From positions 14,446,001 through 14,510,000 of the forward strand of contig NC_135254.1 in NCBI RefSeq assembly GCF_964204865.1: DNA of 64,000 bases. The letters are read 5' to 3'. The notes below the pieces were generated by a model. The model was not told the DNA's origin, made no database searches, and saw nothing but the letters and a program-made list of their open reading frames with translations. Of this stretch, positions 5,615 through 55,317 are shown piece by piece (position 1 is the stretch's first letter; every line of letters starts with the position of its first letter). The position numbers and the translations under genes were made by a program. Origin of the DNA: Styela clava (taxonomy: Eukaryota).

Positions 5615-5795
5615 GCTTCCTCCACCACCAAGTCCATGCTTCCGAAAACAAACAATACAGTAAAAACTAATCCCATACCAGACTTGGAATGGTAACCGGA
5701 CGAGAGGCCGTGGTTCGCCATATGGATAAGCCGTCTTATCGGCTTTCCTCTCCCCCGGGATAAATATGTAAATCCTATCCTAAATCCTATCCTAT
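5615..5795 (+). mobile_element. tRNA-derived SINE family 1, 5'-truncated, (ATCCT)n tail
   Basis: Near-identical to the 3' half of the full-length copies at 49625-49950 and 54418-54756. Confidence 0.85.
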
Positions 5796-24042: not shown

Positions 24043-24900
24043 CAGGAGTGGCCAACCCGCGGCTCTTTCTCCGGTTTCATGCGGCTCTTTTCGTCTTGGT
24101 TATTTTAAGGAAAAAATAATTCGCGAACTACGGTTCGTCATGTTTCGATTATTCATCGTGCATCCTTCTTTTACGAATTTACGTCAAAAATACACAAACG
24201 CTTTCGTTCACTCCACCACTCAATCGTCCATTATTACGTCACAATCAAATTCTTTGTTGTGATATGTTTATTGCACTACAACAGCTGTCGTAATCGTATC
24301 GAAAACGAAGTTCGGCGGAAAACGCGCAGTTTTCCATTTGGGTGAAGTAATTGAAGTGCAGATAAAACGCCACAGATTACGTCGTCGAGGACTCATTTAA
24401 TTCTGAGACGGAAATACCCCCTAGTCGCAGTTGACCTCCATCATCAAGTCCATGCTTCCGAAAACAAATAACTGGCTAAGTATCCCATACCCGACCTGGA
24501 CTGGTAACCGGACGAGAGGCCGTGGTTTGCCATATGATTAAGCCGTCTTATCGGCTTTCCTCTCCCCCGGAATAAATATGTAAATCCTTGAGGCTGCGAC
24601 TGAGTTGAAGATGGTCAATCTTTATGAGGAAGACCCGCTAAAATGAGCTTAATAGGAAGAAACCACTGAGTTGCGCTTAGGATATTGTCAATGTTCGGGC
24701 GACATACGTCTGCGAATATGTGTTTTCTACCCTAAAACACGTGAACTCAAAGCAATGATCTGTTCTGACTGACACCCATGTAAAAGAACCGCTCCGATTG
24801 GCTACAACGACATACAAGCCAAATTTAAAGAGGTTTGTTCAATCCATGAAGTCCCACTAAGAAGCATGTATTACAATAAATGACTTGTAAATTTCTGTCA
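24043..24900 (+). mobile_element. Internally deleted hAT (Charlie/Buster-like) element with hATC dimerisation remnant
   Basis: CAGGAGTGGCCAACCCGCGGCTC end. 24675-24860 reads ALRILSMFG.TYVCEYVFSTLKHV.SK..SVLTDTH..LRLATTTYKPNL..SH*. 3' boundary approximate. Confidence 0.7.
24435..24588 (+). mobile_element. SINE family 1, 5'-truncated, inserted in the hAT remnant
   Basis: Matches the SINE 3' half, ending ataaatatgtaaatcct. Confidence 0.85.
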
Positions 24901-41657: not shown

Positions 41658-43271
41658 TCCTTTGCGACCCTCACAGCCTTATGAATAATTCGAGTTCAAA
41701 ACATGACACACTATAACTAACTCGCTCACGGAGTATTGAACATAAAAGTTTACCAAACACTACTGTACTCTACATTAAAATACATTATCCTAAAATATCT
41801 TCACCAGGAAGCAAAACCATAATGCATGCCAGCCATGCCGACGCAAACGCCTGCGAGACGCGACACGCACGTGATACTTATTAGCATATTATGCATTTTG
41901 AATTCATGATAAGTGGCGTGATGCTGTTTGTACGCCTACACACAGTGTTTGCATTCTAAAATAATTCAAAGATTGATATTTGACTAAATTCAACTGTTTC
42001 ATTAATCCGTAACAGGATTTACCAATTTATGAGTTATTTTTTTACTTTGCGTGCGTTCATGAATAACTATACGCACTCGTGATATTTCAATGAGTGCGGG
42101 GGAAATACATCATTTGTTCATCGTGAAGCCAGAGTTCTGATATTAGTGTTCTATAGCAAAATTTACTTGTATATCCAGAAATTTAAATAAAAATATGACG
42201 TGTCTTTTTCAGATGATTGACACGCGTGCAACATGATTGGTGATTTGCCAAACCTATGAGCATATATACATATACATATGCTCATTGGCCAAACGTATCG
42301 ATGCCGCATATACGGTACTGGTGCCATTATAGACGATGCCCTGTTGTTCGAACGATTTGCCGCAACAAGACATATGCATAATCTTGTTCGTTTTATTCCA
42401 TGACAACCACACCACAAATGCGAAGGAATGTAGGGTTTTCCCATCCGCATACATTATTATGCATTGTAAATTTATGGCGGTGCTCAATCCAGTTTATTTA
42501 GAGGTGCACCGATATTTCGCCGAAGATTTTCTGTGCAATTACAGCCCCCCGCTATACCTTCTTCATTTAGATCTAACATAGATGATATTAAATATTCTTA
42601 TTGAAAAAATCAAGATCCATCAAATTACTGCAATTCATATTTTGACAGGAATGGTCCCAGCAGAAGATTATCACAAGAAAATACTATTCTTGTCAATTCC
42701 CATCTTTTAGCGATACAATCAGGCGTTTACCATTAAAACAATTGCGACGACCAATATTTCCGAGTGAAAAAGCTGTGCGAAGCTGCAGCTTTATTTCCTT
42801 TCAATCTCACAACCTTTTACTAGCTGAGGCACCAACATCAACTTGTGAGCATCTCACACTATTAGGCAAAATTAATATATTTAAATCAATCAAACAATAT
42901 AAACAAATATTAAACGGTGAAACTCTTGACTAGATCTATTGCATTTTCACTGAATTCCAAATAGAAAACTATACCATATTCACACTCGAAAAATATCGGA
43001 AATATATAACCCATAGAGGCGGGAACTAAGGTTGGGTACTGAAAGTAAATAGGTATGGATTATCTCCACTAACACGCCACATTTTAATCTTTTGAGAATG
43101 CAAAATGAAAATAAATTATTCGATGTAACAGTAATTACAGTATATCAGCTGAGGTTAATCCTGGTCTTGATATGAAACTCTTGGGTCTATGAGATAATAC
43201 AGTTATCGATATCCAACTTGATATATAAATTAAATGTGTTGGTCTCCATACAATAAATTTGGGAAACTTTA

Positions 43272-46200
43272 TTACAGCTTCGACAATTCCCCCTGATTGT
43301 CACCCACATTGTATTCCACCCAGTCTTGTGCGATTGGGGCAGAAAGCATTTCATCACTTAATTTGAATGATGAACAGAGATGAAGAGCATCAGGTGCAAG
43401 ATCTCGACATGCTTCAGCTGCAACTTCATTTACCTGAGTATAGAAAGTTAATTTTACCGTATATTATAACCATTTAATTCTGCAATCCCTAATGTTTTAA
43501 GTATGTCAAACACATGAGTGATAGGATAGGAAATACATATTATCTCAGAGGATATGAAAACTGATAAAATTGCTTAATCATATGCTGAAGCACGGACTCC
43601 CTATTACCAGACCATGTCTGGTATGGGATTAGTTAGCCATTTATTTGTTTGAGATACATGAACTTGATGGTGGAGGAAGCCGTAACCGATCACAGGTTAT
43701 ATGAACCACCCTATGGCGGTGAGGAGTCCAGAAACCACCGCAGGATGATCAGAGGTGCAATGTGAAGCATATTCCTAATGTTTAGCACGACACGCCACAC
43801 CGCCAAGCCTGCTGTCACCATGTCAGGTATGGTATAATTACGCAATTCAATTGTTTCCATGCATAGTTATGATAAGTAAAAAAAAGTCATCTTTTTAATT
43901 TGTTACTCGAACCTTAAAGATTTTGCAGGTCCGAATGTAGTCAGAGTTGTTTATCTGAAATAGCCCACTTTTAAAAGATGGTTGAAAGTACGATATAAGA
44001 TACTTTACCTGCTTTGCTATTGAAGGCGTGATGACCTCATTTGCCGCAAACCATCCAAGATCACGTTGAATAGTATCAATCAAAAATAAGTGATATAATT
44101 TTGATAAGATGGTTTTGAGTGATGAATGAGTATCTGGAGAATCAATTGTAAACTTCACCCTTTCGCTAATCAACCTTTCTCCATAAGATCTTGCAGCATT
44201 CTGGATGAAAAACAGATTCAATAAGTAATCATTTGAGTAAAATATTCAAAAGCAGAGCGCAACTTAATCATATGGCGAACCACCGCCTCTTGTCCGGTTA
44301 CCACTCGTATGGGATTAGTTAGCCAGATATTTTGTTTCCAGATGCATGAGCTTGATGTTGGAGGAAGGCGCAACCGACCAGCGGCTACATGAACCACCCT
44401 ACGACGGTGAGGATAGGAAAATAGTCATTCAATTATCTTTTACAGTCTAAAAAATACAGTAAACAAACTTAGTACCTGCACAAGATCGCTCTCTTGTAAC
44501 ATCCATGTATCGAAGATTTTGTCCATTCCTCCTTTCATTAATTTCACTCCAAGTTCAGAGAACTGAGAAGTCTCCCTTAGTTGGAGTAAATAATGAAGAT
44601 AAGCCGGGCTCTTCAAATCTGAAATAGAAACAAAGGAATAGTATGAATTTTTTAAAATATACAAATTAATTCAAGCAATTACAAAAGGCAATTTGACAGC
44701 TTATAAATTTGGAATATTGATAACCTATTTTAAATAAAGCATAATAAAATGATAGCAGCACTTCTTGTTTAAATATATAATCTTTATAAATATTGTTACC
44801 TGCTTCAACTGGTTCAAGTTTTTCAGGATTGAAAAGGTTTAATCTCTCTTTGGCAACTTTCTAAATGGTAAAGGCAAATTTGAGTCGCAATTAATCGAAA
44901 ACCCGCATCAATTTTACCATCTTATGGCTATGCTTCATATGCCAGACATTTCAAAGTCTCTACTCTATTAATCAACATCTGTTATGTTTAGGTTACACAT
45001 AAATATAACAAGAAAAATTAACCTGCATGAGAACGCTGTTGTCTCCTTCCGCAGTTATGGAAGCATGACTCGATCCAATAAATGTACCGAATCTGTTAAC
45101 ACTGAGGTAGCCCTGAGAAAGGAAAATATTTGTAATAGAAGTAAATGTATTATATTCAATCATTATCTATTACATGGTGGACAAGGGATTTGAATCAGAG
45201 AATTTTAAGTTGCCATGAAAACATAGCAGAGCTTTAATGCTTTAACCCAGGGGTGAATCACTTTCCAGGGTAGGTTCCAGATAACAGACCTTCTTACTGG
45301 GGTGGAGGGTCAATATTAAACTATGATTAAAAACAGTTTACGGTTTACAAAAACTAGCGTAACAGTTATGTACAACAAACATCTATTGTACCACCAAGTT
45401 GCACAATGATTAACAGGACCTCTGTATCCAGCTGCATGCGTCCAAGCAGCTTTTTTAAATCAGGCTTGAAGCTGCTTGTGCTGATTCGTTACACCGCTCA
45501 TAGGTTTGAAAACACTAGAGGAGATCTGTTTTTGCTTTTATTAATCTTCATACTTCGAAATAATAATTCAGAGATGGGTGAATTTGAGATCGCTCCTTAT
45601 GCACAATATATTCAGGTGCGAATAATGATAAGGAATTATGGTATTTATTTTAGCCGACGATTCGTTATTTCAATCGGTATTTTTAACGAAAATTTATATC
45701 CCTAAAAACCGTGTCATAATTTCAGCACGTACAAGTGGGCCAGATAAAATACTTTGGTGGACGTTATTGATCCCGCTGAAATTCTCTTAAACGTCATATT
45801 AGATTCATTCTCCAGTCTATTTTACTAGGATTTACCTGACCACCACATCTCTCTCTTGCTACAGCAGCCATTTCCACAGCATGCCATCCGATGATTGCTT
45901 TGAGAGCACAGCATAAAGTCACAACATTGAGATGGCCGGTTTTATCAGTCGGTCTCTTGGCCCATTCTTCTTTGACATAATCAAGAGCAAGATTCATGGC
46001 GATTGTTCGAGCCATGAAAGGCATAAGTGATCGTTGTTGCAACTAAAATATATGACTAGGTTAGAATGGTGCTAGGTTGGAATGGTAGTAAATGGTGTTA
46101 AATAAGGATATATTATAAAACAAAGCCAATATAATTATCATACAAAGACTACTCAATGTAGCTCATCCTCCACAGTATATACAGGGTGTCTCAAAAGTAA

Positions 46201-49200
46201 GTATACACTATATTAATTTTGATTTTCTTTTTAAATACTCATGATAGAGCGATCATTTATTCAGAAAACATAGTACGAATGAGTAGTAAAATTTGGGTAT
46301 TGTTTGCATTTTTCAACACCCACAGAATGACAAGGAGATTAACCCAAAAAATGAGGTGCAAAATTGCTGCTTGGCAATTTGGAATTAATTCGGCTCCTAC
46401 ACAACAAATAATTTATGTAATTCATTTTAAATTCATAGAAACTGGATCTGTAGTTGATGCAGAAAGATCAGGAAGACCAAGGAGCGGGCACTCTGAGGAA
46501 AACATTCAGAGCCGAATTAATTCCGAATTCTCTGTTAAAAAGAGTCACTGAGTTTGCCATACTGATTTATATGCTTCCTGCCAAACAGCAATTTTGCACC
46601 TTATTTCTTGGGTAATCTCCTTGTCATTCTGTGGGTCAATCAAAAATGCAAACAATACCTAAATTTTACTTCTTATTCATACTTTGTTTCATGAATAAAT
46701 GAAAGCTCTATGATGGGTACCTGAAAAGAAAATCAATATTAAAAGTGTATACTTACTTTTGAGACACCATGTATAATAAAAAAGGCAATTATCAGTGGCA
46801 AATCTGCAATAAGCGATTTGATTTGTTGGAAAAAATTATCCAAACCGACTTGGACACGAAATTCATTCTCAGTATAATTCATTTTGGAAAAAAGCTGTTC
46901 ACTGCAATATGTTCTTCCAAACATTCACATTACACATTTTGCATTGTCATGCAGATGAGTATACGAGTATAGGTGGATTTCTAGACATATTCATTATAAA
47001 GTTGCCAATCAGAACTGCACAATATATGGCAGACTTTTCTATGTTACCCAAACATTTTCATGTCAAATTTTGAAAATCAAAATTAACTAAACAGATAATT
47101 ATACCAACGCCAGGCACATTTGGCAAGTATACGACATGCAACTGACATGCCCTTTCTCTCCTGCTACTTACTCCATTGTTATGACATAAAATGTGTGCAG
47201 ATAATAATTAATGTATGAGCAATTTTGTGTTATTATGCATAAAGCATAAAAGTGGGGTCTCACAAAAAGTGAGGGCAACAAAAATTTTGTTTGCAGGCCG
47301 CAATTGGCCCGTGCCACCGCAATCAAGAACTAACCTGATACTGCAGAATTGCCATGTCAGATTTGCCTTGAGGACCAACAGTCATTCGAGTAGCTGCATA
47401 CCGCATTGATATGGAAAGACCAGCTTTTGCACAACCGATTGCCATTGAAGCAATACAAATACGTCCGGATAATAATTGGTCAGCAACAGTGAGGAATCTC
47501 CCACGATTACTTTTAATTGAGGTAGTAAATGTCCCGTCCTCTGCTACATCCGAATACCTGTAGTAGTGTAGAAGGATAGTAATTTTACATTTATATATTG
47601 AAAGCTGTTAAGATGGGCTAAACTTATAGAGAACTACAGCCTCTTGTCCAGTTACCTGTCCATCTTAGGTACTTGATTAGTCAATCAGTTTTTGGTTCAG
47701 ATGCATGGAATTAATGTTGAAGGATGCCATAACTGACCAGCAGTTACATTACCACTATGGTATGAGCCCAGCAATCTTCTTGTACATACCCCTCCTCAAT
47801 AGAGGTGCGATTGATTGCAAGCATACTTCTTATGCTTAGCATGATGAGAGAAACTAAGACAAGAAATACAAATTCCAAAAATGACTTTACAATAATTTGT
47901 TCTGAATTTCCTGAAATTGAATAAATGGGATTTTACCTTTATTATATAACATGTAAAAACAATATTATTAAACGTACATGGTAGATAGGGCTGTCCAAGC
48001 GAACCAAATATTCGAAATCGAATCGAATCGCAAATTATTCGAATCGTTTTTCGGCTAATTTCCGAATCACTAAAATTAGGTACAAAAAGCGGAAACCACC
48101 CTTGCAGGACGTTTTTCATCGGACAAGGGGCGGCGCTTCGAGCTTAGACCACTCTCGCTCCCGGCTTAATTGGTTTCCCAATATTTCTCTGCCTTCATTT
48201 TGTGATAAACATGTTATTCCTAATGCCTACCCGGTGGCACATGATCAGCCATTTCATGCATGGTCATCATAACTTAAAAGTTAGAATCGGTAATGACGTT
48301 TTTAAGAGAGTACACCATTTCATGCATGGTCATAATAACTTAAGAGTTATAATCTGTAATGACGTTTTTGAGAGAGTACACAAGGAGAAAAAAGGGCAAA
48401 TTAGAAAACGATAGTTCTATAAATAGAATCGATTTGAAGCTGTTGAGTTAGTTATCATAAGAACATGGTACAGGCAACTCAAAGCTGAAACAGGTGTTTT
48501 GGGATCCTTATGATGGCAATACCTTCTTTCAATGGAATATGTAATTTTTTATGATGGCAACACTGTATTATCCATCTATATACCAAGACAAATAATTGCA
48601 CTCTTGAATTTTGATTGCATATTATAGTCATCAAACTAGCTTCGAATTTGTTAAATGCAATTTTGAATTTGAGCAACAGTTTTATCTATATTAATGGTTG
48701 TTATTATTTTGCTGAAAATTACACAAAAAACATGAGACTAGTGAATAGGATTAGAATAGCATTTACAGGCTTTACATGTCCTATTAACACTGAATCCATT
48801 AGAATTGAGATTGCAATTTTTGAATTGTTTTGCAATTTTTACTCTTAACACTCAACAGTTTGAGACCCAAATTTTGGAGTCCTCCACTTTTTTTTGACCA
48901 GTTCATGCAAGCGTTTGATCACCTTTCATCTGAAATCATTGTATTGCAAAATACCAGCAGTAAGTAAGATGTAACTGCACATATGTTACCATAACATTGA
49001 AGGGTAGGCGGTTATTGTATAATAGAGACAGATTCAGGATTGCGCAACAATATTCGATTATTCGGTTCGATTCGGCAAAAATATTCGATTCGAATCAAAA
49101 AATTATTCGATTTTGGACAGCCCTAAATTGGTAGACAACCCAGACTTATTTTTGAGGTTGATATCGGAATGAATAACATGAACATAATTTTGCTAAAAAA

Positions 49201-52200
49201 TAAAATAAAATATATTTCCTACTTGTTTAGCAAATTTTCTCTTGGAACTCGTACTTTGTCGAAGGATAATTTGGCATTATCAACCCCATTTAATCCCATC
49301 TTGTGGCCCATGTCTTCAACTATGACCCCTGGCATCACTTTCATGTCATTGTCACGAATTCGCACCAAGAAGCCATGTATTCCATGATGGGTGCCATCCA
49401 CAGAAAGCTGATAGAAATGAAACGTAACAATGTGAAATGACACAAAGCTGAGAAGTTACACGCTCTGAGACAAGGGTTTTCAATCTGGCTAAATTGAAAT
49501 CTGGGGTCAAATTTCATCTGCCTCGGGGGTAAATTTTGCAGGCCAGAAAAATCACTTTTTGTTTTTATACAATAAAGCTATACATTTCTCTTCATAAGAT
49601 AACTAAATTTTGCTGAGTCATTAAGGCACGGCAATGTGGCTCATCGTGCTTAGCTTTAGGAATACGCTCGGCACCGCACCTCTGATTACTCTGCGTGGGT
49701 TCGCAGGTTCGAATCCCATGCAGGGATAGTTATGTGCGAGAGGATTGCTGGACTCCTCGCCACTGTAGGGTGGTTCACGTAACGCTGGTCGGTTACGGCT
49801 TCCTCCACCATGTCCATGCGCCTGGGAACGAATAACTAACTGATAACTGACTAATAACACCCGACATGGAATGGTAACCGGATGAGAGGCTGTGGTTCGC
49901 CATATGGTTAAACCGCCTTATCGACTTTTCTCTCCCTGGGATAATTATATATTCTTATCGTGCATCAATTCTTATATAGTATTTCTATAAGGTAAAGTAT
50001 TTAAGGGAATTTAAACTTTTGAAAAATTTGAATCATTAAACGCTCTGTTCAGGCAGTCTTAATTATTTTTTATTGTAAATAACAATATTATTATCTAATC
50101 TCGTCTTAATAATGCATAATGTATCACTTATTGTATTGTATTACTGTAATCAGTATTCTCTGAAGAATGTGAGTTAATACAAGATAAAAAAGATCATCTA
50201 TGCCCATAATGTCTTTTTTGGGAAAATAATTCAAGGAGCACTAGACTAGATAGAGTCCAGCTAGATTCCTTATAATCATATTCCCTCCCTACTTGAGACT
50301 TCTTTTTCAAAATGTTAGTGCAAGTGAAATATCATTGGCAAAATATCACTGAACCTAATATTGAAAAGCACTGTTTCAAACATGACGGGACCATTGTTTG
50401 AATAAAGACAACAGCCAAACCCTTAATCACACAACTCTTAATGTTAATAATCAAGGCGAGCTTACCTGTGCAAATACAATAATGTGTTTGGCATGAATAG
50501 CACCGTTAGTAATCCAATATTTCTGAGCTAGTGTTGTTGGTGTATTAATTATGAATTCTTGCGTTGCCTGAAAGTGAAAAACGGACAGAAATAATGATTT
50601 AGCAATCGAAATAATGCATCACGATACACGAAGATTGCTTTTCATATTAGGACATTTTTAAGAAAGACAAATTTTGCACAAAACAGCAAAACCGAACTTG
50701 ACATAATATATTGAAGCAAGAAAACTGAATGTGTTATATACGTTTACTGAAAAAATTATAACAAAAATATGTCTTTCAGCGTATATTATTGGGTTTTTCT
50801 AAATTTGAAGATGGCATTTGATACATTCTGTTGCAAACCTTAACAATCTTTAAAAACGTCTATTACACTGGATTTGCTATCAATTTGTAACTAGCCAAAT
50901 TTTGTTGAAATTTCGGTACTCCCGTAGTATGTGCACCAGGTTAGGCCATAATTTTATTCCGATTCTCCTTATTTTAGTTCTATACCAGTTCGGGGACTGT
51001 CTGTGTTAGCCAAGTGAATATCCCTATCCCCCCTGCCCATAGGTTTCAGTCCCTTTACACAACTTGATGTAAAGTAGGCAAACAAAATTAGTTACCTCCA
51101 TATTGGTACGCATACCGTACTTCTGGAGCGCCAACATTTTTATATCGAATAATAAACTGCCATTACACTTTTAATATTTTAGGTTTCAGAACATTAATTG
51201 GCAGTTTACGATTTCTGATCAGTTGACCAAATTCTTTTTCGATTTTAAGTTCCTGCCCTGATCAACAAATACCACATATGCCTCAAAATTATGCCAAATT
51301 ATGATTTCATACGTGAATAAGGGTACTAAAAAGTGTAACTTAGATCTCTAATAAAATAACTACTAGGTTTATATATGGCAGCCACTATTTGAAAATCCTA
51401 TTTGTTTTTCTGATACAAATTTACCTTGTCATATACTGCAGTTGTTTCCATCTCCACTGCGTTATTTCCGTAACCAAGTTCTGTCAGTCCAAAACATCCA
51501 ATGTCATGAAGGCTATCAATACCTGAACAAAACAAAAATTGATTTTAACAACCCTAACTTGCAGAGAGATGTGTTAATGGGAATATAAAAGAACAACATG
51601 TTGTTCTCACTGTTTTCCACTTCTCATTCCTTTTTTCACTACCTATCTTCAGAGCCATGATCCACGACAAGAAAAGGCACTAAATCATAAAAATTTCTCA
51701 ACACGTTTTATCCCGCTAACGTTCTGACTTGAACTGTCGCTTGTTAAATTGTCGAGAGCCAGCTGAGAAGCACAGCTCTTCATTTCACTTGGCCGTGTGC
51801 TCGGCTCAGGTGTTCAAGCTCCAAATTTCCATTCCACAGAATTTTTGACTCAAATTTTTTGGTTGACCACTGAATTGTTCAAATCCTTCGACTACGGAGG
51901 TATAGGTAATAATATATTCAGATTTGAAGTATTGATGCTTACCTTTGATAAGCATGTCATGATGTCGTTTTGTTCCAAGCATTACTATAGTTCCTCCAAA
52001 CAAATTAAACTGCACTGTCATTTTTGTTGCCATTGCAGGATCTATGATAGCTGCAATCTCATGAGCTGCAAAAATTCTTAGTGGATTATGCCAGAAGTCA
52101 GTGACAGATATGAAACCAGCCTGTAAAACAGTAAAGATGAATAAAATTTGTCAGTATTATTTATGATGCTTTTCAAGCATAATTCAGACAATCAATTCAA

Positions 52201-53672
52201 AAAAAAATCTTAATCTCACATCACAAATTCTCTGCAATCGTTGTAAAGCAACATCTCTCTCCTCTTCAAGAGATATATTGTATCTTGGAGTCATACAAGG
52301 ATCACTCATAAAGTCTCGAAACTTTGTTCGCATTTCATGATTGTCATGATCCAGTAACTTATTCATTTCATCAATGTCAAAAGATGGCTTGCTACCGCCA
52401 TTCCAATTTGACCTGTGTTTTTGAAAAATGTTTACATTGTTGTAAGGTATGGCCCCCACAAGATTACATAATAACAATTTTTAATTAGTACTTGTACATA
52501 TCAGCTCTTATTATCATAAGTTCAATTCAGATATAAATACTGAAACAACTAACTGGTAACAATTCCCATACCCGACATTGACTGGGAACCGAACGCGAGG
52601 CCATGATTGAGTCGTCTTATTGGTTTCCTCTATTCAGAGACAAATATGAAAATCCTAAAAGAACCCTTGCATGTGCATATTTAAGTCTTTGTCTCCCACG
52701 TCCCACTGAATATGGCTATAGAGAAGTGCATAGGGGAAACATGGTGGGATTCTCGGGGAAACATGCACTGAATACACCAATTTTTATGATCAAATTTTTC
52801 GAAGCCAGATCTAAATTCTTTCATTTGGTAATTCGGCGGGAGTCGCAATGGGGTAGGTATTGAAATTGAAAATTTCTCCGACCCCATAGCACAAGTATGT
52901 AAAGTTTGGAAAGGACGTGACTTGAACATAGAAACATAAGTAATTACTTACAAGATTTCAGGTGGGGTCATTTTGTTAGATAGAGTCTGATTCATAACCG
53001 CAGACGTACTACACAAAGTCTTTGTCATCAAATTGGAAGATTGATTTTGTTCGCAGATATTCATCTGAAATTTAGTCATTAATTCATATAAAGTACATAT
53101 AGTGCATAATATAAGTATAAATTTACATTTTGGTTTAAGAAAAAAAAACATTTAAAAATTCATTATTTCATGGAACGAATAATATTCAATTGATCATTTT
53201 AATTCTGCCAACTTGGCGATACTCTCGAATATAAGCTTACTAATAATATAAAAATTCAAAAGTAAAAATACAGAAATATCATTAGAGTATAAATATATAC
53301 CAAACCAGTCTCAAATATTGAAATCTGCATACCTTCTGACCTGAAAAAAAATGAAATGCATTGTAGAAATATGTGCTATATACACACTAAAAGTTGACAT
53401 AGTAAAGTGCCAGGGCAGCACGGTGATGATGGCAAATGTGCCTTAAACTTCTAATTTTGAAACAACAAAATTGCGTAATTCTGTACCGGTACCGTAATTG
53501 AGGGGGGATTGTATAGTCTTGCAAGTACCGGTATACTGTTGCGTAAAATCTAAATATAGTCACAAACCTTACCTTTTGACATCGTTGATATCTGTCTAAA
53601 ATTATTAACAGAATTGCAAGCTCTGAAAAACTGTCTGTAGTTAGCAAGAGAAATTCTTCCGGAAGACAGCAT
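43272..53672 (-). CDS. Acyl-CoA oxidase family protein, 15 exons, ~684 aa, N-terminal presequence-like segment and C-terminal PTS1 (SKL)
   Basis: Exons 53672-53573, 53340-53333, 53064-52952, 52412-52220, 52120-51943, 51522-51425, 50567-50466, 49407-49223, 47557-47335, 46042-45836, 45112-45023, 44860-44800, 44618-44476, 44200-44009, 43433-43272 (2055 nt, in frame). Motifs [50 protein letters not shown] (catalytic Glu), ELSKL*. Confidence 0.93.
43521..43806 (-). mobile_element. SINE family 1, degenerate, with internal deletion
   Basis: ataggatagg tail, body and head (cgccacaccgcc) homologous to 54418-54756. Confidence 0.8.
44262..44412 (-). mobile_element. SINE family 1 fragment
   Basis: catatggcgaaccac..ggattagtta..gaaccaccctacgacggtgagga matches the SINE body. 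Confidence 0.75.
45248..45780. mobile_element. hAT MITE, relative of 1497-2051
   Basis: CAGGGGTG start; interior (gcacaatgatt, ttaatcttcat, gatgggtgaatttgag, cgtcataatttc..cacgtacaagt) aligns with 1640-2030. Confidence 0.6.
46182..46771 (+). mobile_element. Internally deleted Tc1/mariner element with ~195-bp TIRs
   Basis: TA|CAGGGTGTCTCAAAAGTAAGTATACACT ... AGTGTATACTTACTTTTGAGACACCATG|TA. The core encodes [23 protein letters not shown], an N-terminal HTH/GRPR motif of Tc1/mariner transposases. Confidence 0.88.
46845..46960 (-). mobile_element. hAT transposase hATC remnant
   Basis: [17 protein letters not shown] matches the MFGSTY.CEQLFS.M consensus. Confidence 0.6.
47986..49125. mobile_element. 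hAT-type MITE
   Basis: TIR TAGGGCTGTCCAA / TTGGACAGCCCTA, subterminal TTCGA arrays, internal ~66-bp direct repeat at 48249-48381; TSD imperfect. Confidence 0.75.
49625..49950 (+). mobile_element. SINE family 1, full length
   Basis: A box TGGCTCATCGTG, B box GGTTCGAATCC, then the conserved body. Confidence 0.88.
50915..51132. mobile_element. MITE-like repeat with GG..CC termini
   Basis: Imperfect TIR ggtactcccgtagtatgtgcacca / tggtacgcata..cttctggagcgcc; relatives at 3248-3390 and ~5009-5090. Confidence 0.55.
52545..52657 (+). mobile_element. SINE family 1, 3' fragment
   Basis: aattcccatacccgac..gccatgattgagtcgtcttattggtttcctct..aaatatgaaaatcct. Confidence 0.65.
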
Positions 53673-54417
53673 GGTCAAATAATACAAAAACTCGAGGTTA
53701 GCCTAAATTCTACAGAAAAAAAGGTCTCAGCAACAGATTACTTGAAACCAGACAAACATCAAAGTCCAAAGGTCTGTACACTCTGCGGGAGACCGATTAC
53801 AAACTTGATCAACACGATTAGTCCATGCATGGGCCAAATAAAAAAGATTTGGTGTCAATTTCCGACCCACTCGCAATCTGTGTTGATAGGAGTCAAGAAT
53901 ATCGTTACTTTAGCAGTGCATAACGTAACCCCGTTATCGTGAATTTACATTGTCCTACTTTTATATTTTCCTTGTTTATTGGACCGCGTCAGTGTACATA
54001 ACGATCGTCTCAATATTATATTGTTGTTGATGTTATTATTCTTCTCTTTCGTCATGATGAAATCCCTTTTCTCTTCGAATACAGGACCAATTGTTTTGAA
54101 ATTTTCATCAGTTAAAGATTGATTTTTTTGCCAGAAAGCTATTACTTTTACCTATTTCAAAAATTTCTGTGGACTTTAGAGATTCGTTTGAGATGTGTCA
54201 GAATCAAAAATAGCGACACCTTGTGACATGTCCATATATTTGAGCACAACTCTCTTTTTCATTTAATATTAATTCTTGGATGTTTTGAATCAAAAAAGGG
54301 GAAATGATGCTTCTATTTTTATCAATCCCAAACAATCAAACAATACATGAAAAAATCCATGATGACTGTATTTTTTGGTTAACGAAATAATAAAACTCTC
54401 TATCTCTCTCCACGACT

Positions 54418-54756
54418 TAGGATAGGATAGGATTTACATATTTATCCCGGGGGAGAGGAAAGCCGATAAGACGGCTTATCCATATGGCGAACCCCGGCCT
54501 CTCGTCCGGTTACCATTTCAAGTCGGGTATGGGATTAGTTATATTGTTTGTTTTCGGAAGCATGGACTTGGTGGTGGAGGAAGCCGTAACCGTCCAGCGG
54601 TTACGTGAACCACCCAACGACGGCGAGGAGTCCAGCAATCCTCTCGCACATAATCATCCCTGCATGGGATTCGAATCTGTGAACCCACGCAGAGTAATTA
54701 GAGGTGCGGTGGCGAGCGTATTCCTAACGCTTAGCCCGTTGAGCCACACCGCCGGC
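54418..54756 (-). mobile_element. SINE family 1, full-length young copy (a second fragment follows at 54782-54892)
   Basis: Minus-strand head GCCGGCGGTGTGGCTCAACGG (A box), GATTCGAATCC (B box), (ATCCT)n tail. Confidence 0.9.
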
Positions 54757-55317
54757 TTCCTATTCATTCAATTCGTTTATCACGGTAAGCCGCGGCCTCT
54801 CGTCCGGTAACCAGTTCATGTCGGGTTTGAGAATAGTTTACCATATATTTATTTCAGATGCGTGGACTTGATGGTGGAGGAAGTTGTCACCGACACAAAT
54901 ACAGCAATCAAAAATTTTCGTGTATTAAAGTGATATTCTGGGAAGCACACGCATGGCGGCGACATAGAGCGGCCAAAATAACAAATCGTCCTAAATTTCC
55001 TCTTTATAACTCGGCGTTCATAATATACTGCTTCAGTTTTAATATAGTTCCGTTGAAGTCGGGCCGAAACCATTTTATACGTTGCCTTATTTTCTGGCGG
55101 AGGATAATTATTGAATGATATTCTAGTTACAATTTTTGCGCATAGTTACGAACGTCGATATCTAAGTTCTTCATAAAAAATGATGGTTCAATTGTGTTAG
55201 TACAGACGAAATTTCCCCTCAATAGGACTGATAGATACTTGTAGTATATTGTCTTTATTATTTAATATTGTAACTTTGTTCTACAATAAGCAGTGAAGCA
55301 ATAGTGATCAACCCATA

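What the first reader, a model, noticed from the sequence alone, without database searches (positions are those of the whole stretch)
43272..53672. Acyl-CoA oxidase with both a mitochondrial-type presequence and a peroxisomal SKL
Seen: exon 1 encodes [33 protein letters not shown] (4 Arg, Ser-rich, no acidic residue, RQIS|T-like cleavage context, second Met at position 31), and the C-terminus is ELSKL*. Established: acyl-CoA oxidases are peroxisomal H2O2-producing enzymes, while mitochondria use ETF-linked dehydrogenases. Inference: dual targeting, implying an oxidase-type beta-oxidation entry step or H2O2 source in mitochondria.
Basis: partly seen in the sequence, partly recalled or inferred. 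Interest (0 to 1): 0.75.

Follow-up and report, generated by a model that had tools for sequence, protein, structure and literature searches.

The report
Sea-squirt acyl-CoA oxidase with two addresses
A sea-squirt gene for a fat-burning enzyme usually found in peroxisomes carries both a mitochondria-style entry tag and a peroxisome tag, and its relatives in many invertebrates carry only the mitochondria-style tag.

Summary
ATG 53672 opens the quoted 33-residue exon-1 peptide, and the gene ends ELSKL-stop at 43272.

RNA-type contigs from 4 of 4 runs join exon 1, an 8-nt microexon and a 113-nt exon to the oxidase body. The Met1 frame therefore runs unbroken through 15 exons and 684 aa. It equals a Styela clava RefSeq protein except at residue 39.

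It is a true acyl-CoA oxidase family member. Its best solved relatives are oxidases at E 4e-63, against 7e-15 for dehydrogenases.

The new point concerns the whole family:
- 128 of 162 animal relatives have a 51-100 aa N-terminal extension.
- 99 of those 128 have no acidic residue in the first 30.
- Only 4 of 162 end in a canonical PTS1, and PTS2 motifs are not enriched.

So the presequence looks ancestral and the SKL looks like an ascidian addition (3 of 11 paralog-B rows).

Dual localisation is plausible but untested. No targeting predictor could be run. A mitochondrial signal usually overrides PTS1 (PMC4585086).

The parts
53673..53809 (-). 5' untranslated part of exon 1. It is at least this long and contains a 10-codon upstream ORF starting at 53759.
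   Evidence: Contig ends lie at 53809 (X1), 53797 (X3) and 53745 (X9). Sequence read.
53573..53672 (-). Coding exon 1: Met1 plus 32 residues, the presequence-like peptide, and 1 base of the next codon.
   Evidence: GT donor. Junction seen in contigs of 4 of 4 runs.
53333..53340 (-). 8-nt microexon (exon 2) that keeps Met1 in frame with the oxidase.
   Evidence: four letters lie between the joint 53066/53571 in 4 of 4 runs, and the rest is absorbed by the flanking gt and ag. AG/GT flanks. Frame check.
52952..53064 (-). Exon 3. It begins with ATG (Met37) and encodes a Ser/Thr/Asn/Gln-rich linker ending in the conserved Met-Thr-Pro motif.
   Evidence: joints. The newer RefSeq model P0274 starts here.
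52220..52412 (-). Exon 4, where acyl-CoA oxidase homology starts (LLDHDNH region).
   Evidence: joints. Family alignment.
51943..52120 (-). Exon 5.
   Evidence: joints.
51425..51522 (-). Exon 6 (start of the Acyl-CoA_dh_M domain).
50466..50567 (-). Exon 7.
   Evidence: The loose end at 51424 continues into this exon..
49223..49407 (-). Exon 8.
   Evidence: Frame plus AG/GT. Pfam PF02770. Equals P0312.
47335..47557 (-). Exon 9 (query of the library search).
45836..46042 (-). Exon 10 (ACOX C-alpha1 domain).
   Evidence: PF22924 at 31.4 bits, above its cut-off..
45023..45112 (-). Exon 11, which holds the conserved A-E-G-D-N motif with the presumed catalytic Glu.
   Evidence: Alignment to chain 5ys9.
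44800..44860 (-). Exon 12.
44476..44618 (-). Exon 13.
44009..44200 (-). Exon 14 (ACOX C-terminal domain).
   Evidence: PF01756 at 26 bits, above its cut-off. (own-genome hit L007).
43272..43433 (-). Exon 15. Ser-Lys-Leu is at 43283-43275 and the TAA stop at 43274-43272.

Best explanation
**What the locus is.** It is the Styela clava gene LOC120344988. It has 15 coding exons and encodes a 684-aa acyl-CoA oxidase of the subfamily that databases name after plant ACX2/ACX3. It is the ascidian 'paralog B' of that subfamily.

**Shown here.**
- The main assembled mRNA includes exon 1, the 8-nt microexon and exon 3.
- One polypeptide therefore carries a basic, acid-free N-terminal peptide, a 40-residue Ser/Thr/Asn-rich linker, a complete oxidase body with the catalytic Glu motif, and a C-terminal Ser-Lys-Leu.

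**Inferred.**
- The N-terminal peptide is a mitochondrial presequence inherited from the animal ancestor of this subfamily.
- Full-length protein therefore goes mainly into mitochondria.
- The appended SKL lets a share reach peroxisomes. That share would be either molecules that escape mitochondrial import and fold in the cytosol, or a shorter product lacking the presequence (for example one starting at Met37, as in the newer RefSeq model).

**Open.** Whether it works as an H2O2-forming oxidase inside mitochondria.
For: **One mRNA, one frame.**
- Contigs from 4 of 4 runs (3 studies) show the joints exon 1 / microexon / exon 3 / exon 4 / exon 5 / exon 6.
- The model has 684 codons and 0 internal stops.
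- It is identical to RefSeq XP_039270273.1 except at residue 39.

**True oxidase family member.**
- Pfam pieces lie in order along the exons.
- The best solved relatives are acyl-CoA oxidases at E 4e-63 to 8e-41. Acyl-CoA dehydrogenases reach only 7e-15.
- The E-G-D-N motif aligns.

**Presequence character in this gene.**
- Exon 1 has 4 Arg, 1 Lys and no acidic residue.
- Arg6, Arg13 and Arg17 fall on one helical face.

**Presequence character across the family** (162 relatives returned).
- 128 have an extension of 51-100 aa before the LLDHDNH anchor.
- 99 of those 128 have no Asp or Glu in the first 30 residues, against 0 of 128 for a 30-residue stretch of the mature domain.
- They average 5.0 Lys+Arg in the first 30.
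- The extension is poorly conserved in sequence but conserved in place and make-up.

**No rival peroxisomal signal in the family.**
- Canonical PTS1: 4 of 162.
- Strict PTS2: 1 of 128, against 0.4 in shuffles.
- Loose PTS2: 7 of 128, against 6.5 in shuffles.

**SKL looks selected.**
- It is present in Styela B, in P0278 (84% identical) and in Phallusia B, the last on a differently built tail.

**Precedent.** A Guillardia theta ACOX candidate with a predicted mitochondrial peptide localised to mitochondria-like structures, not peroxisomes, in a heterologous host (PMC9244630, passages read).
Against: - There are no localisation data for any member of the animal clade.
- No dedicated predictor could be run.
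- The hydrophobic moment of exon 1 is not beyond its own shuffles (248 of 2000 reach it).
- Only 4 Arg in 33 residues, with many Asn, Ser and Gln, is a moderate presequence, not a textbook one.
- The hierarchy of signals predicts that a PTS1 behind a working presequence may never be used (PMC4585086). That argues against the 'share in peroxisomes' part.
- The newer RefSeq model starts at Met37, so annotators found some support for a form without the presequence.
- Contigs cannot show rare isoforms.
- 29 of 128 extensions do carry an acidic residue in the first 30.
- 22 of 162 relatives have short N-termini, which may be cut models or real isoforms.
Confidence: 0.4

Rival explanations
1. Mitochondria only. 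The presequence works and dominates, and the SKL is a silent, unused PTS1, as in some other mitochondrial proteins.
For: - Passages in PMC4585086 report that a reporter carrying both a mitochondrial signal and a PTS1 was found exclusively in mitochondria.
- The same paper says that some exclusively mitochondrial proteins encode a functional but unused PTS1.
- Family-wide presequence-like extensions occur without a PTS1.
Against: - SKL is kept in a relative that is 84% identical.
- SKL occurs again on a differently built tail in Phallusia paralog B. This hints at selection, although 8 of 11 paralog-B rows lack it.
- The genome also keeps a paralog A with a presequence and no PTS1, so paralog B may have diverged in destination.
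Confidence: 0.3
2. Peroxisome only. SKL is the working signal, and the N-terminal extension is not a mitochondrial signal in vivo. It could be a decayed PTS2-type presequence, a regulatory tail, or a part mostly absent from the translated product.
For: - The tripeptide is canonical SKL.
- All characterised acyl-CoA oxidases are peroxisomal (established knowledge).
- More distant protist homologues carry R-L-x5-H-L near the N-terminus (P0032, P0085, P0019) or a PTS1-like end (P0124 ARL, P0095 SRL), with no long extension.
- Exon 1 holds R-I-x6-Q-F, one residue too long for a PTS2.
- A Lingula relative has a strict PTS2 at residue 8.
- The newer RefSeq model omits exon 1.
Against: - PTS2 motifs occur at chance rate in the 128 extensions.
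- 158 of 162 relatives would then have no recognisable peroxisomal signal at all.
- The assembled mRNA in 4 of 4 runs keeps Met1, which sits in a good initiation context, in frame.
Confidence: 0.2
3. Isoform switch. Two mRNAs give two products. With the microexon, the long form goes to mitochondria. With the microexon skipped, or with a 5' end or trans-splice at exon 3 (which begins with ATG), a Met37 form goes to peroxisomes.
For: - RefSeq has held both a 684-aa and a 648-aa model for this gene.
- Exon 3 starts exactly with ATG.
- Skipping the microexon closes the Met1 frame after 51 codons.
Against: - All four runs' contigs include the microexon, and none of the listed loose ends at exon 3 shows another 5' end. 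Contigs do hide rare forms, however, and 33 loose ends were not shown.
- In a skipped mRNA, Met1 and Met31 would still precede Met37.
Confidence: 0.15

Closest known systems
Peroxisomal acyl-CoA oxidases with solved structures (chains 5ys9, 5y9d, 7q84, 1is2, 1w07; that the first two are from Yarrowia is recalled)
   Same: - Same family by sequence, at E 4e-63 to 9e-46.
- Same Pfam domains in the same order.
- Conserved E-G-D-N motif.
- C-terminal SKL, as in ACOX1.
   Different: - A 74-residue N-terminal extension with presequence make-up.
- It belongs to a separate animal clade whose other members nearly all lack a PTS1.
Plant ACX2/ACX3-type oxidases, the source of the database names 'ACOX 2/3, peroxisomal-like'
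   Same: - The subfamily is named after them.
- An N-terminal extension precedes the oxidase body.
   Different: - The plant enzymes use a PTS2 (recalled).
- Here the PTS2 pattern is not met in this protein and is not enriched in the animal clade.
Enzymes carrying both a mitochondrial presequence and a PTS1 (CRAT, AMACR, alanine:glyoxylate aminotransferase, yeast Ptc5), as described in PMC4690255, PMC8919083, PMC4585086 and PMC10906886
   Same: - An N-terminal presequence-like peptide plus a C-terminal PTS1 in one gene.
- Internal Met codons that could give a form without the presequence.
   Different: - No acyl-CoA oxidase turned up among these in the passages shown by my term look-ups in those four papers, which are not the whole texts.
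- Localisation here is untested.
Guillardia theta ACOX candidate ID_147553 (PMC9244630)
   Same: An ACOX-like protein with a predicted mitochondrial peptide. Its presequence-GFP and full-length-GFP fusions localised to elongated, non-peroxisomal structures in a diatom host.
   Different: - It is from a protist, and its authors call its classification as ACOX or ACAD uncertain.
- Its C-terminus (SRS) is not a working PTS1.
- Its relation to the animal clade was not tested here.

Membership tests
Acyl-CoA oxidase family (Pfam PF02770 + PF22924 + PF01756) | Middle beta domain, C-alpha1 domain and ACOX C-terminal domain, in that order. | tested here: met
   - Exon-by-exon Pfam scan: PF02770 on exons 6-8, PF22924 on exons 9-11, PF01756 on exons 14-15.
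- Single exons are mostly below the whole-protein cut-offs. Exon 10 (31.4 bits) and exon 14 (26 bits) are above.
- Precomputed Pfam for the identical RefSeq protein P0274 lists PF01756, PF02770, PF22924 and PF00441.
Acyl-CoA oxidase family | Closer to oxidases than to acyl-CoA dehydrogenases. | tested here: met
   nine oxidase chains at E 4e-63 to 8e-41. The best dehydrogenase is at 7e-15.
Acyl-CoA oxidase family | Catalytic base Glu in the E-G-(D/E)-N motif. That this Glu is the base, Glu421 of the rat enzyme, is recalled. | tested here: met
   The exon 11 motif aligns with W-E-G-D-N of chain 5ys9.
Acyl-CoA oxidase family | Electron transfer from FAD to O2 with H2O2 release. | not testable with these tools
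   Needs an enzyme assay.
PTS1 cargo | C-terminal [SAC][KRH][LM]. | tested here: met
   SKL precedes the TAA stop. Its use in vivo was not tested.
PTS2 cargo (as plant ACX2/ACX3) | The nonapeptide R-[LVIQ]-x2-[LVIHQ]-[LSGAK]-x-[HQ]-[LAF] near the N-terminus. | tested here: not met
   - There is no match in exon 1 or exon 3. The nearest is R-I-x6-Q-F.
- The family is not enriched: strict 1 of 128 against 0.4 in shuffles, loose 7 of 128 against 6.5.
Mitochondrial matrix proteins with a cleavable presequence | N-terminal 20-60 residues that are rich in Arg/Lys and Ser, free of acidic residues and able to form an amphipathic helix. | tested here: inconclusive
   - The make-up is met: 4 Arg, 1 Lys and 0 Asp/Glu in 33 residues, and 99 of 128 relatives are acid-free over their first 30.
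- Amphipathicity is 0.52 over 18 residues, but 248 of 2000 shuffles reach it.
- No trained predictor was run.
Mitochondrial matrix proteins with a cleavable presequence | Import into and processing in mitochondria. | not testable with these tools
   Needs import or localisation experiments.
Dual-signal (presequence + PTS1) proteins | Both signals encoded in one translated mRNA. | tested here: met
   - One search shows the joints in 4 of 4 runs for exons 1-6.
- Exons 7-15 follow from frame and from identity to RefSeq.
- No single contig spanning exon 1 to exon 15 was examined.
Vertebrate ACOXL | Orthology to ACOXL/ACOX4. | not tested
   - No vertebrate row appears among the best 120.
- ACOXL is known to me only from passages in PMC8919083.

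The most novel reading that the evidence does not exclude
Many invertebrate animals (cnidarians, molluscs, annelids, brachiopods, crustaceans, tunicates) keep a highly conserved acyl-CoA oxidase that is imported into mitochondria rather than peroxisomes. This would give mitochondria an oxidase-type, or ETF-repurposed, first step of beta-oxidation that textbooks assign only to peroxisomes. In ascidians one duplicate of this gene is being re-addressed to peroxisomes by gain of a C-terminal SKL, possibly twice, which would catch an organelle relocation midway.
Probability: 0.4. Interest if true: 0.8.

Novelty: new variant of a known kind. Interest (0 to 1): 0.62.

Why it matters
Acyl-CoA oxidase is used as the marker that tells peroxisomal from mitochondrial beta-oxidation. 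If a conserved animal clade of this enzyme sits in mitochondria, three things follow.
- Pathway reconstructions and 'peroxisomal' gene names for many invertebrates would be wrong for this gene.
- Mitochondria of these animals would have either an extra H2O2 source or an oxidase-fold enzyme coupled to the respiratory chain.
- The ascidian paralog with both signals would be a natural test of how a protein changes organelle despite the dominance of N-terminal signals over PTS1.

The tests are simple: reporter fusions, organelle proteomics and an enzyme assay.

Tried and rejected
**Direct exon 1 to exon 4 join.** I first tried to join exon 1 straight to the first oxidase exon (52412). The phases do not fit. 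The read lay-out then showed the microexon and a missed 113-nt exon.

**Exon 4 alone.** It found nothing in Pfam or in the solved structures, so exon 9 was used for the one library search.

**PTS2 idea.** Several relatives and protist homologues show R-[LI]-x5-H-L, and exon 1 has R-I-x6-Q-F. Counting against shuffles showed no enrichment, so I dropped it as the family-wide explanation. It is kept as part of a rival.

**Amphipathicity.** It is no stronger than in shuffles, so I do not lean on it.

**Literature.**
- The phrase 'mitochondrial acyl-CoA oxidase' gave 0 papers.
- 'acyl-CoA oxidase' + ACX2 + metazoa + mitochondrial gave 0 papers.
- 'acyl-coenzyme A oxidase 3' + mitochondrial + Ciona gave 0 papers.
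- Searches gave listings. From these I read passages, by term look-up only, in PMC8919083, PMC4690255, PMC10906886, PMC9244630, PMC5737649 and PMC4585086. All other papers were seen as listings only.
- Camoes et al. 2015 was seen only as a reference.
- Supplements were closed and not asked for. Table S3 and Figure 1b of PMC4690255 (predicted signals of Acox in Ciona) and Table S2 of PMC5737649 could bear on prior notice of this feature.

**Findings index.** By words it gave nothing.

**Dispersed repeat.** No tRNA-like head was found in 43000-55000.

**Not done.** Structure prediction, fold search, the ESM Atlas, the third homologue search, and any test for vertebrate or insect orthologues.

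Full report
**1. What is in the sequence**

The frame has a stop 10 codons upstream. The peptide has 4 Arg, 1 Lys, no Asp or Glu, 7 Ser+Thr, and a second Met at residue 31. At the other end the reading frame closes with Glu-Leu-Ser-Lys-Leu and TAA at 43274-43272.

**2. Is exon 1 part of the gene?**

Exon 1 cannot be spliced in frame directly to the first exon with oxidase homology.

One search for sequencing runs found nine small-share runs that behave like RNA, each holding 0.17-0.19 of the words of a 10-kb genomic stretch. Their kind is a guess by the tool.

I laid four of them, from three studies, on 51350-54450. The contigs of all four showed:
- the joints 53573 | 8-nt microexon 53340-53333 | 53064-52952 | 52412-52220 | 52120-51943 | 51522-51425;
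- the microexon as four unplaced letters, with its other four absorbed by the flanking gt and ag;
- ends upstream of the ATG at 53809, 53797, 53745 and 53678.

Transcripts therefore do not start downstream of the ATG.

With the microexon included, the Met1 frame runs on. Without it, the frame stops after 51 codons.

The remaining exons were placed by frame and AG/GT. The result is 15 coding exons and 684 codons with no internal stop.

A later look-up showed that the model is identical, except for Ile/Leu at residue 39, to RefSeq XP_039270273.1, 'acyl-coenzyme A oxidase 3, peroxisomal-like [Styela clava]'. A newer RefSeq model, XP_077969139.1 (648 aa), starts at Met37, the first codon of exon 3, and is identical from there on. 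The window is therefore Styela clava, or something indistinguishable from it at this gene.

Limits of this evidence:
- Contigs cannot show rare isoforms.
- I did not see one contig spanning exon 1 to exon 15.
- I searched the model exon by exon and left the joined search out.

**3. What the protein is**

Pfam pieces lie in order along the exons: the Acyl-CoA_dh_M domain, then ACOX C-alpha1, then ACOX.

| Solved relatives of the RefSeq protein | E-value |
|---|---|
| Acyl-CoA oxidases (5ys9, 5y9d, human and rat ACOX1, plant ACX1, nematode ACOX) | 4e-63 to 8e-41 |
| Best acyl-CoA dehydrogenase | 7e-15 |

The E-G-D-N motif aligns. That it holds the catalytic Glu is recalled.

The genome has at least four ACOX loci:
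- two canonical ones, on C18 and C3, whose likely last exons end in SKL;
- a paralog A on C9, ending in ...DNQGEVV;
- this gene.

**4. The family view**

The one library search, with exon 9, and two homologue searches with returned full-length proteins gave 162 close relatives. They are 60-85% identical to one another. The rows that carry names come from jellyfish, molluscs, an annelid, a brachiopod, crustaceans and ascidians.

| Measure (unless stated) | Count |
|---|---|
| Extension of 51-100 residues (median 77) before the conserved LLDHDNH anchor | 128 of 162 |
| No acidic residue in the first 30 | 99 of 128 |
| No acidic residue in the first 20 | 117 of 128 |
| Control: no acidic residue in a 30-residue stretch of the mature domain | 0 of 128 |
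| Mean Lys+Arg in the first 30 | 5.0 |
| Canonical PTS1 (this protein, P0278, Phallusia B, Lottia SRL) | 4 of 162 |
| End within two residues of ...NQGE(V/L/I) | 50 of 162 |
| Strict PTS2 | 1 of 128, against 0.4 in shuffles |
| Loose PTS2 | 7 of 128, against 6.5 in shuffles |

The extensions align poorly until a short motif (Asn-Thr/Lys-Met-Thr/Ser-Pro) just before the mature domain. This pattern is usual for targeting peptides.

Rows left out of the 128 were 22 with short N-termini, 6 without the anchor and 6 without a Met start.

By contrast, more distant homologues from protists have no long extension. Named members include Selenidium, Protocruzia, Ancoracysta and Chromosphaera. They carry R-L-x5-H-L at the N-terminus (P0032, P0085, P0019) or PTS1-like ends (ARL, SRL, PKL).

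The simplest reading is that the animal branch swapped peroxisomal signals for a mitochondrial-type presequence.

**5. Where the SKL came from**

A quick maximum-likelihood tree of 57 chosen rows gave these results:
- The ascidian paralog B forms one group of 11 rows (SH-aLRT 98).
- This protein plus P0278, both ending in SKL, are sister to the other nine.
- Of those nine, only Phallusia B ends in SKL.
- The tails are built differently: SKL follows ...GEL directly here, but follows an extra Glu/Pro-rich tail in Phallusia.

Two gains are as likely as one gain with losses. The tree cannot tell which. Paralog A rows of the same species have the presequence-like start and no PTS1.

**6. How it most likely works**

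Shown: one mRNA encodes both signals on a complete oxidase.

Inferred:
- The N-terminal peptide is a working mitochondrial presequence. The support is its make-up, its position and its conservation across the family, together with the absence of any other signal in relatives.
- The SKL gives access to peroxisomes for a share of the protein, or for a shorter product.

Published work cautions that N-terminal mitochondrial signals dominate PTS1, and that a new PTS1 on a mitochondrial protein may be without effect (PMC4585086, passages). 'Mitochondria only' is therefore a strong rival.

'Peroxisome only' is weaker, because it leaves 158 of 162 relatives with no recognisable peroxisomal signal.

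An isoform switch through the microexon or a Met37 start is possible. It is not supported by the four runs' contigs.

**7. Known or new**

The protein itself is in RefSeq under a 'peroxisomal-like' name. Enzymes with both signals are a known class (passages in PMC4690255, PMC8919083 and PMC10906886).

One protist ACOX candidate with a mitochondrial peptide has been localised outside peroxisomes in a heterologous host (PMC9244630).

My searches found no paper on a mitochondrial acyl-CoA oxidase in animals (searches gave 0 papers; searches gave nothing to the point). Subscription journals and supplements were not searched.

I rate it a new variant of a known kind. The family-level reading is the interesting part.

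**8. Limits**

- No targeting predictor, localisation or enzyme data exist here.

Noticed in passing
window 53333-53340: The 8-nt microexon with AG/GT flanks is included in the contigs of 4 of 4 runs. The newer RefSeq model (648 aa, Met37 start) and the older one (684 aa) differ in exactly the part that depends on it.
   Followed up: partly
window 53727-53759: There is a short upstream ORF (ATG at 53759, 10 codons) inside the 5' untranslated region covered by contigs of two runs.
   Followed up: no
window 49600-49930, 43574-43810, 44264-44413, 54459-54894, 5621-5746, 24468-24558: A dispersed repeat of about 300 bp, 70-84% alike between copies. Three copies lie in introns of this gene and one just upstream. 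RNA contig depth is very high over the upstream copy. No tRNA-like head was found.
   Followed up: partly
G000 C18:18862521-18865763 (L001), C3:13982636-13986504 (L002-L004), C9:1270974-1274189 (L006): Three further ACOX loci in the same genome. Two are canonical ones whose likely last exons end in SKL. The third is paralog A of this subfamily, which ends without a PTS1.
   Followed up: partly
proteins P0032, P0085, P0019: Protist homologues of this subfamily carry a textbook R-L-x5-H-L (PTS2) at the N-terminus. Others end in ARL, SRL or PKL. A few animal relatives (P0195 Lingula, P0230, P0290) also match PTS2 near residue 4-8.
   Followed up: partly
family alignment, about 25 residues before the LLDHDNH anchor (window exon 3 end, about 52958-52972): A Met-(Thr/Lys/Ser/Pro)-Pro motif sits just before the mature domain in 51 of 128 long forms. 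4 of 22 short forms start exactly with it, so it is a possible conserved internal start.
   Followed up: no
window 53664, 52310, 52079, 52025: Single-letter differences between the window and RNA-type contigs, plus Ile/Leu at residue 39 against RefSeq. These are likely ordinary polymorphism.
   Followed up: no
window 53950-54260: Many short (38-60 letter), deep contig pieces with mismatches, and two odd joints seen in single runs, upstream of the gene. These are probably repeat-derived.
   Followed up: no
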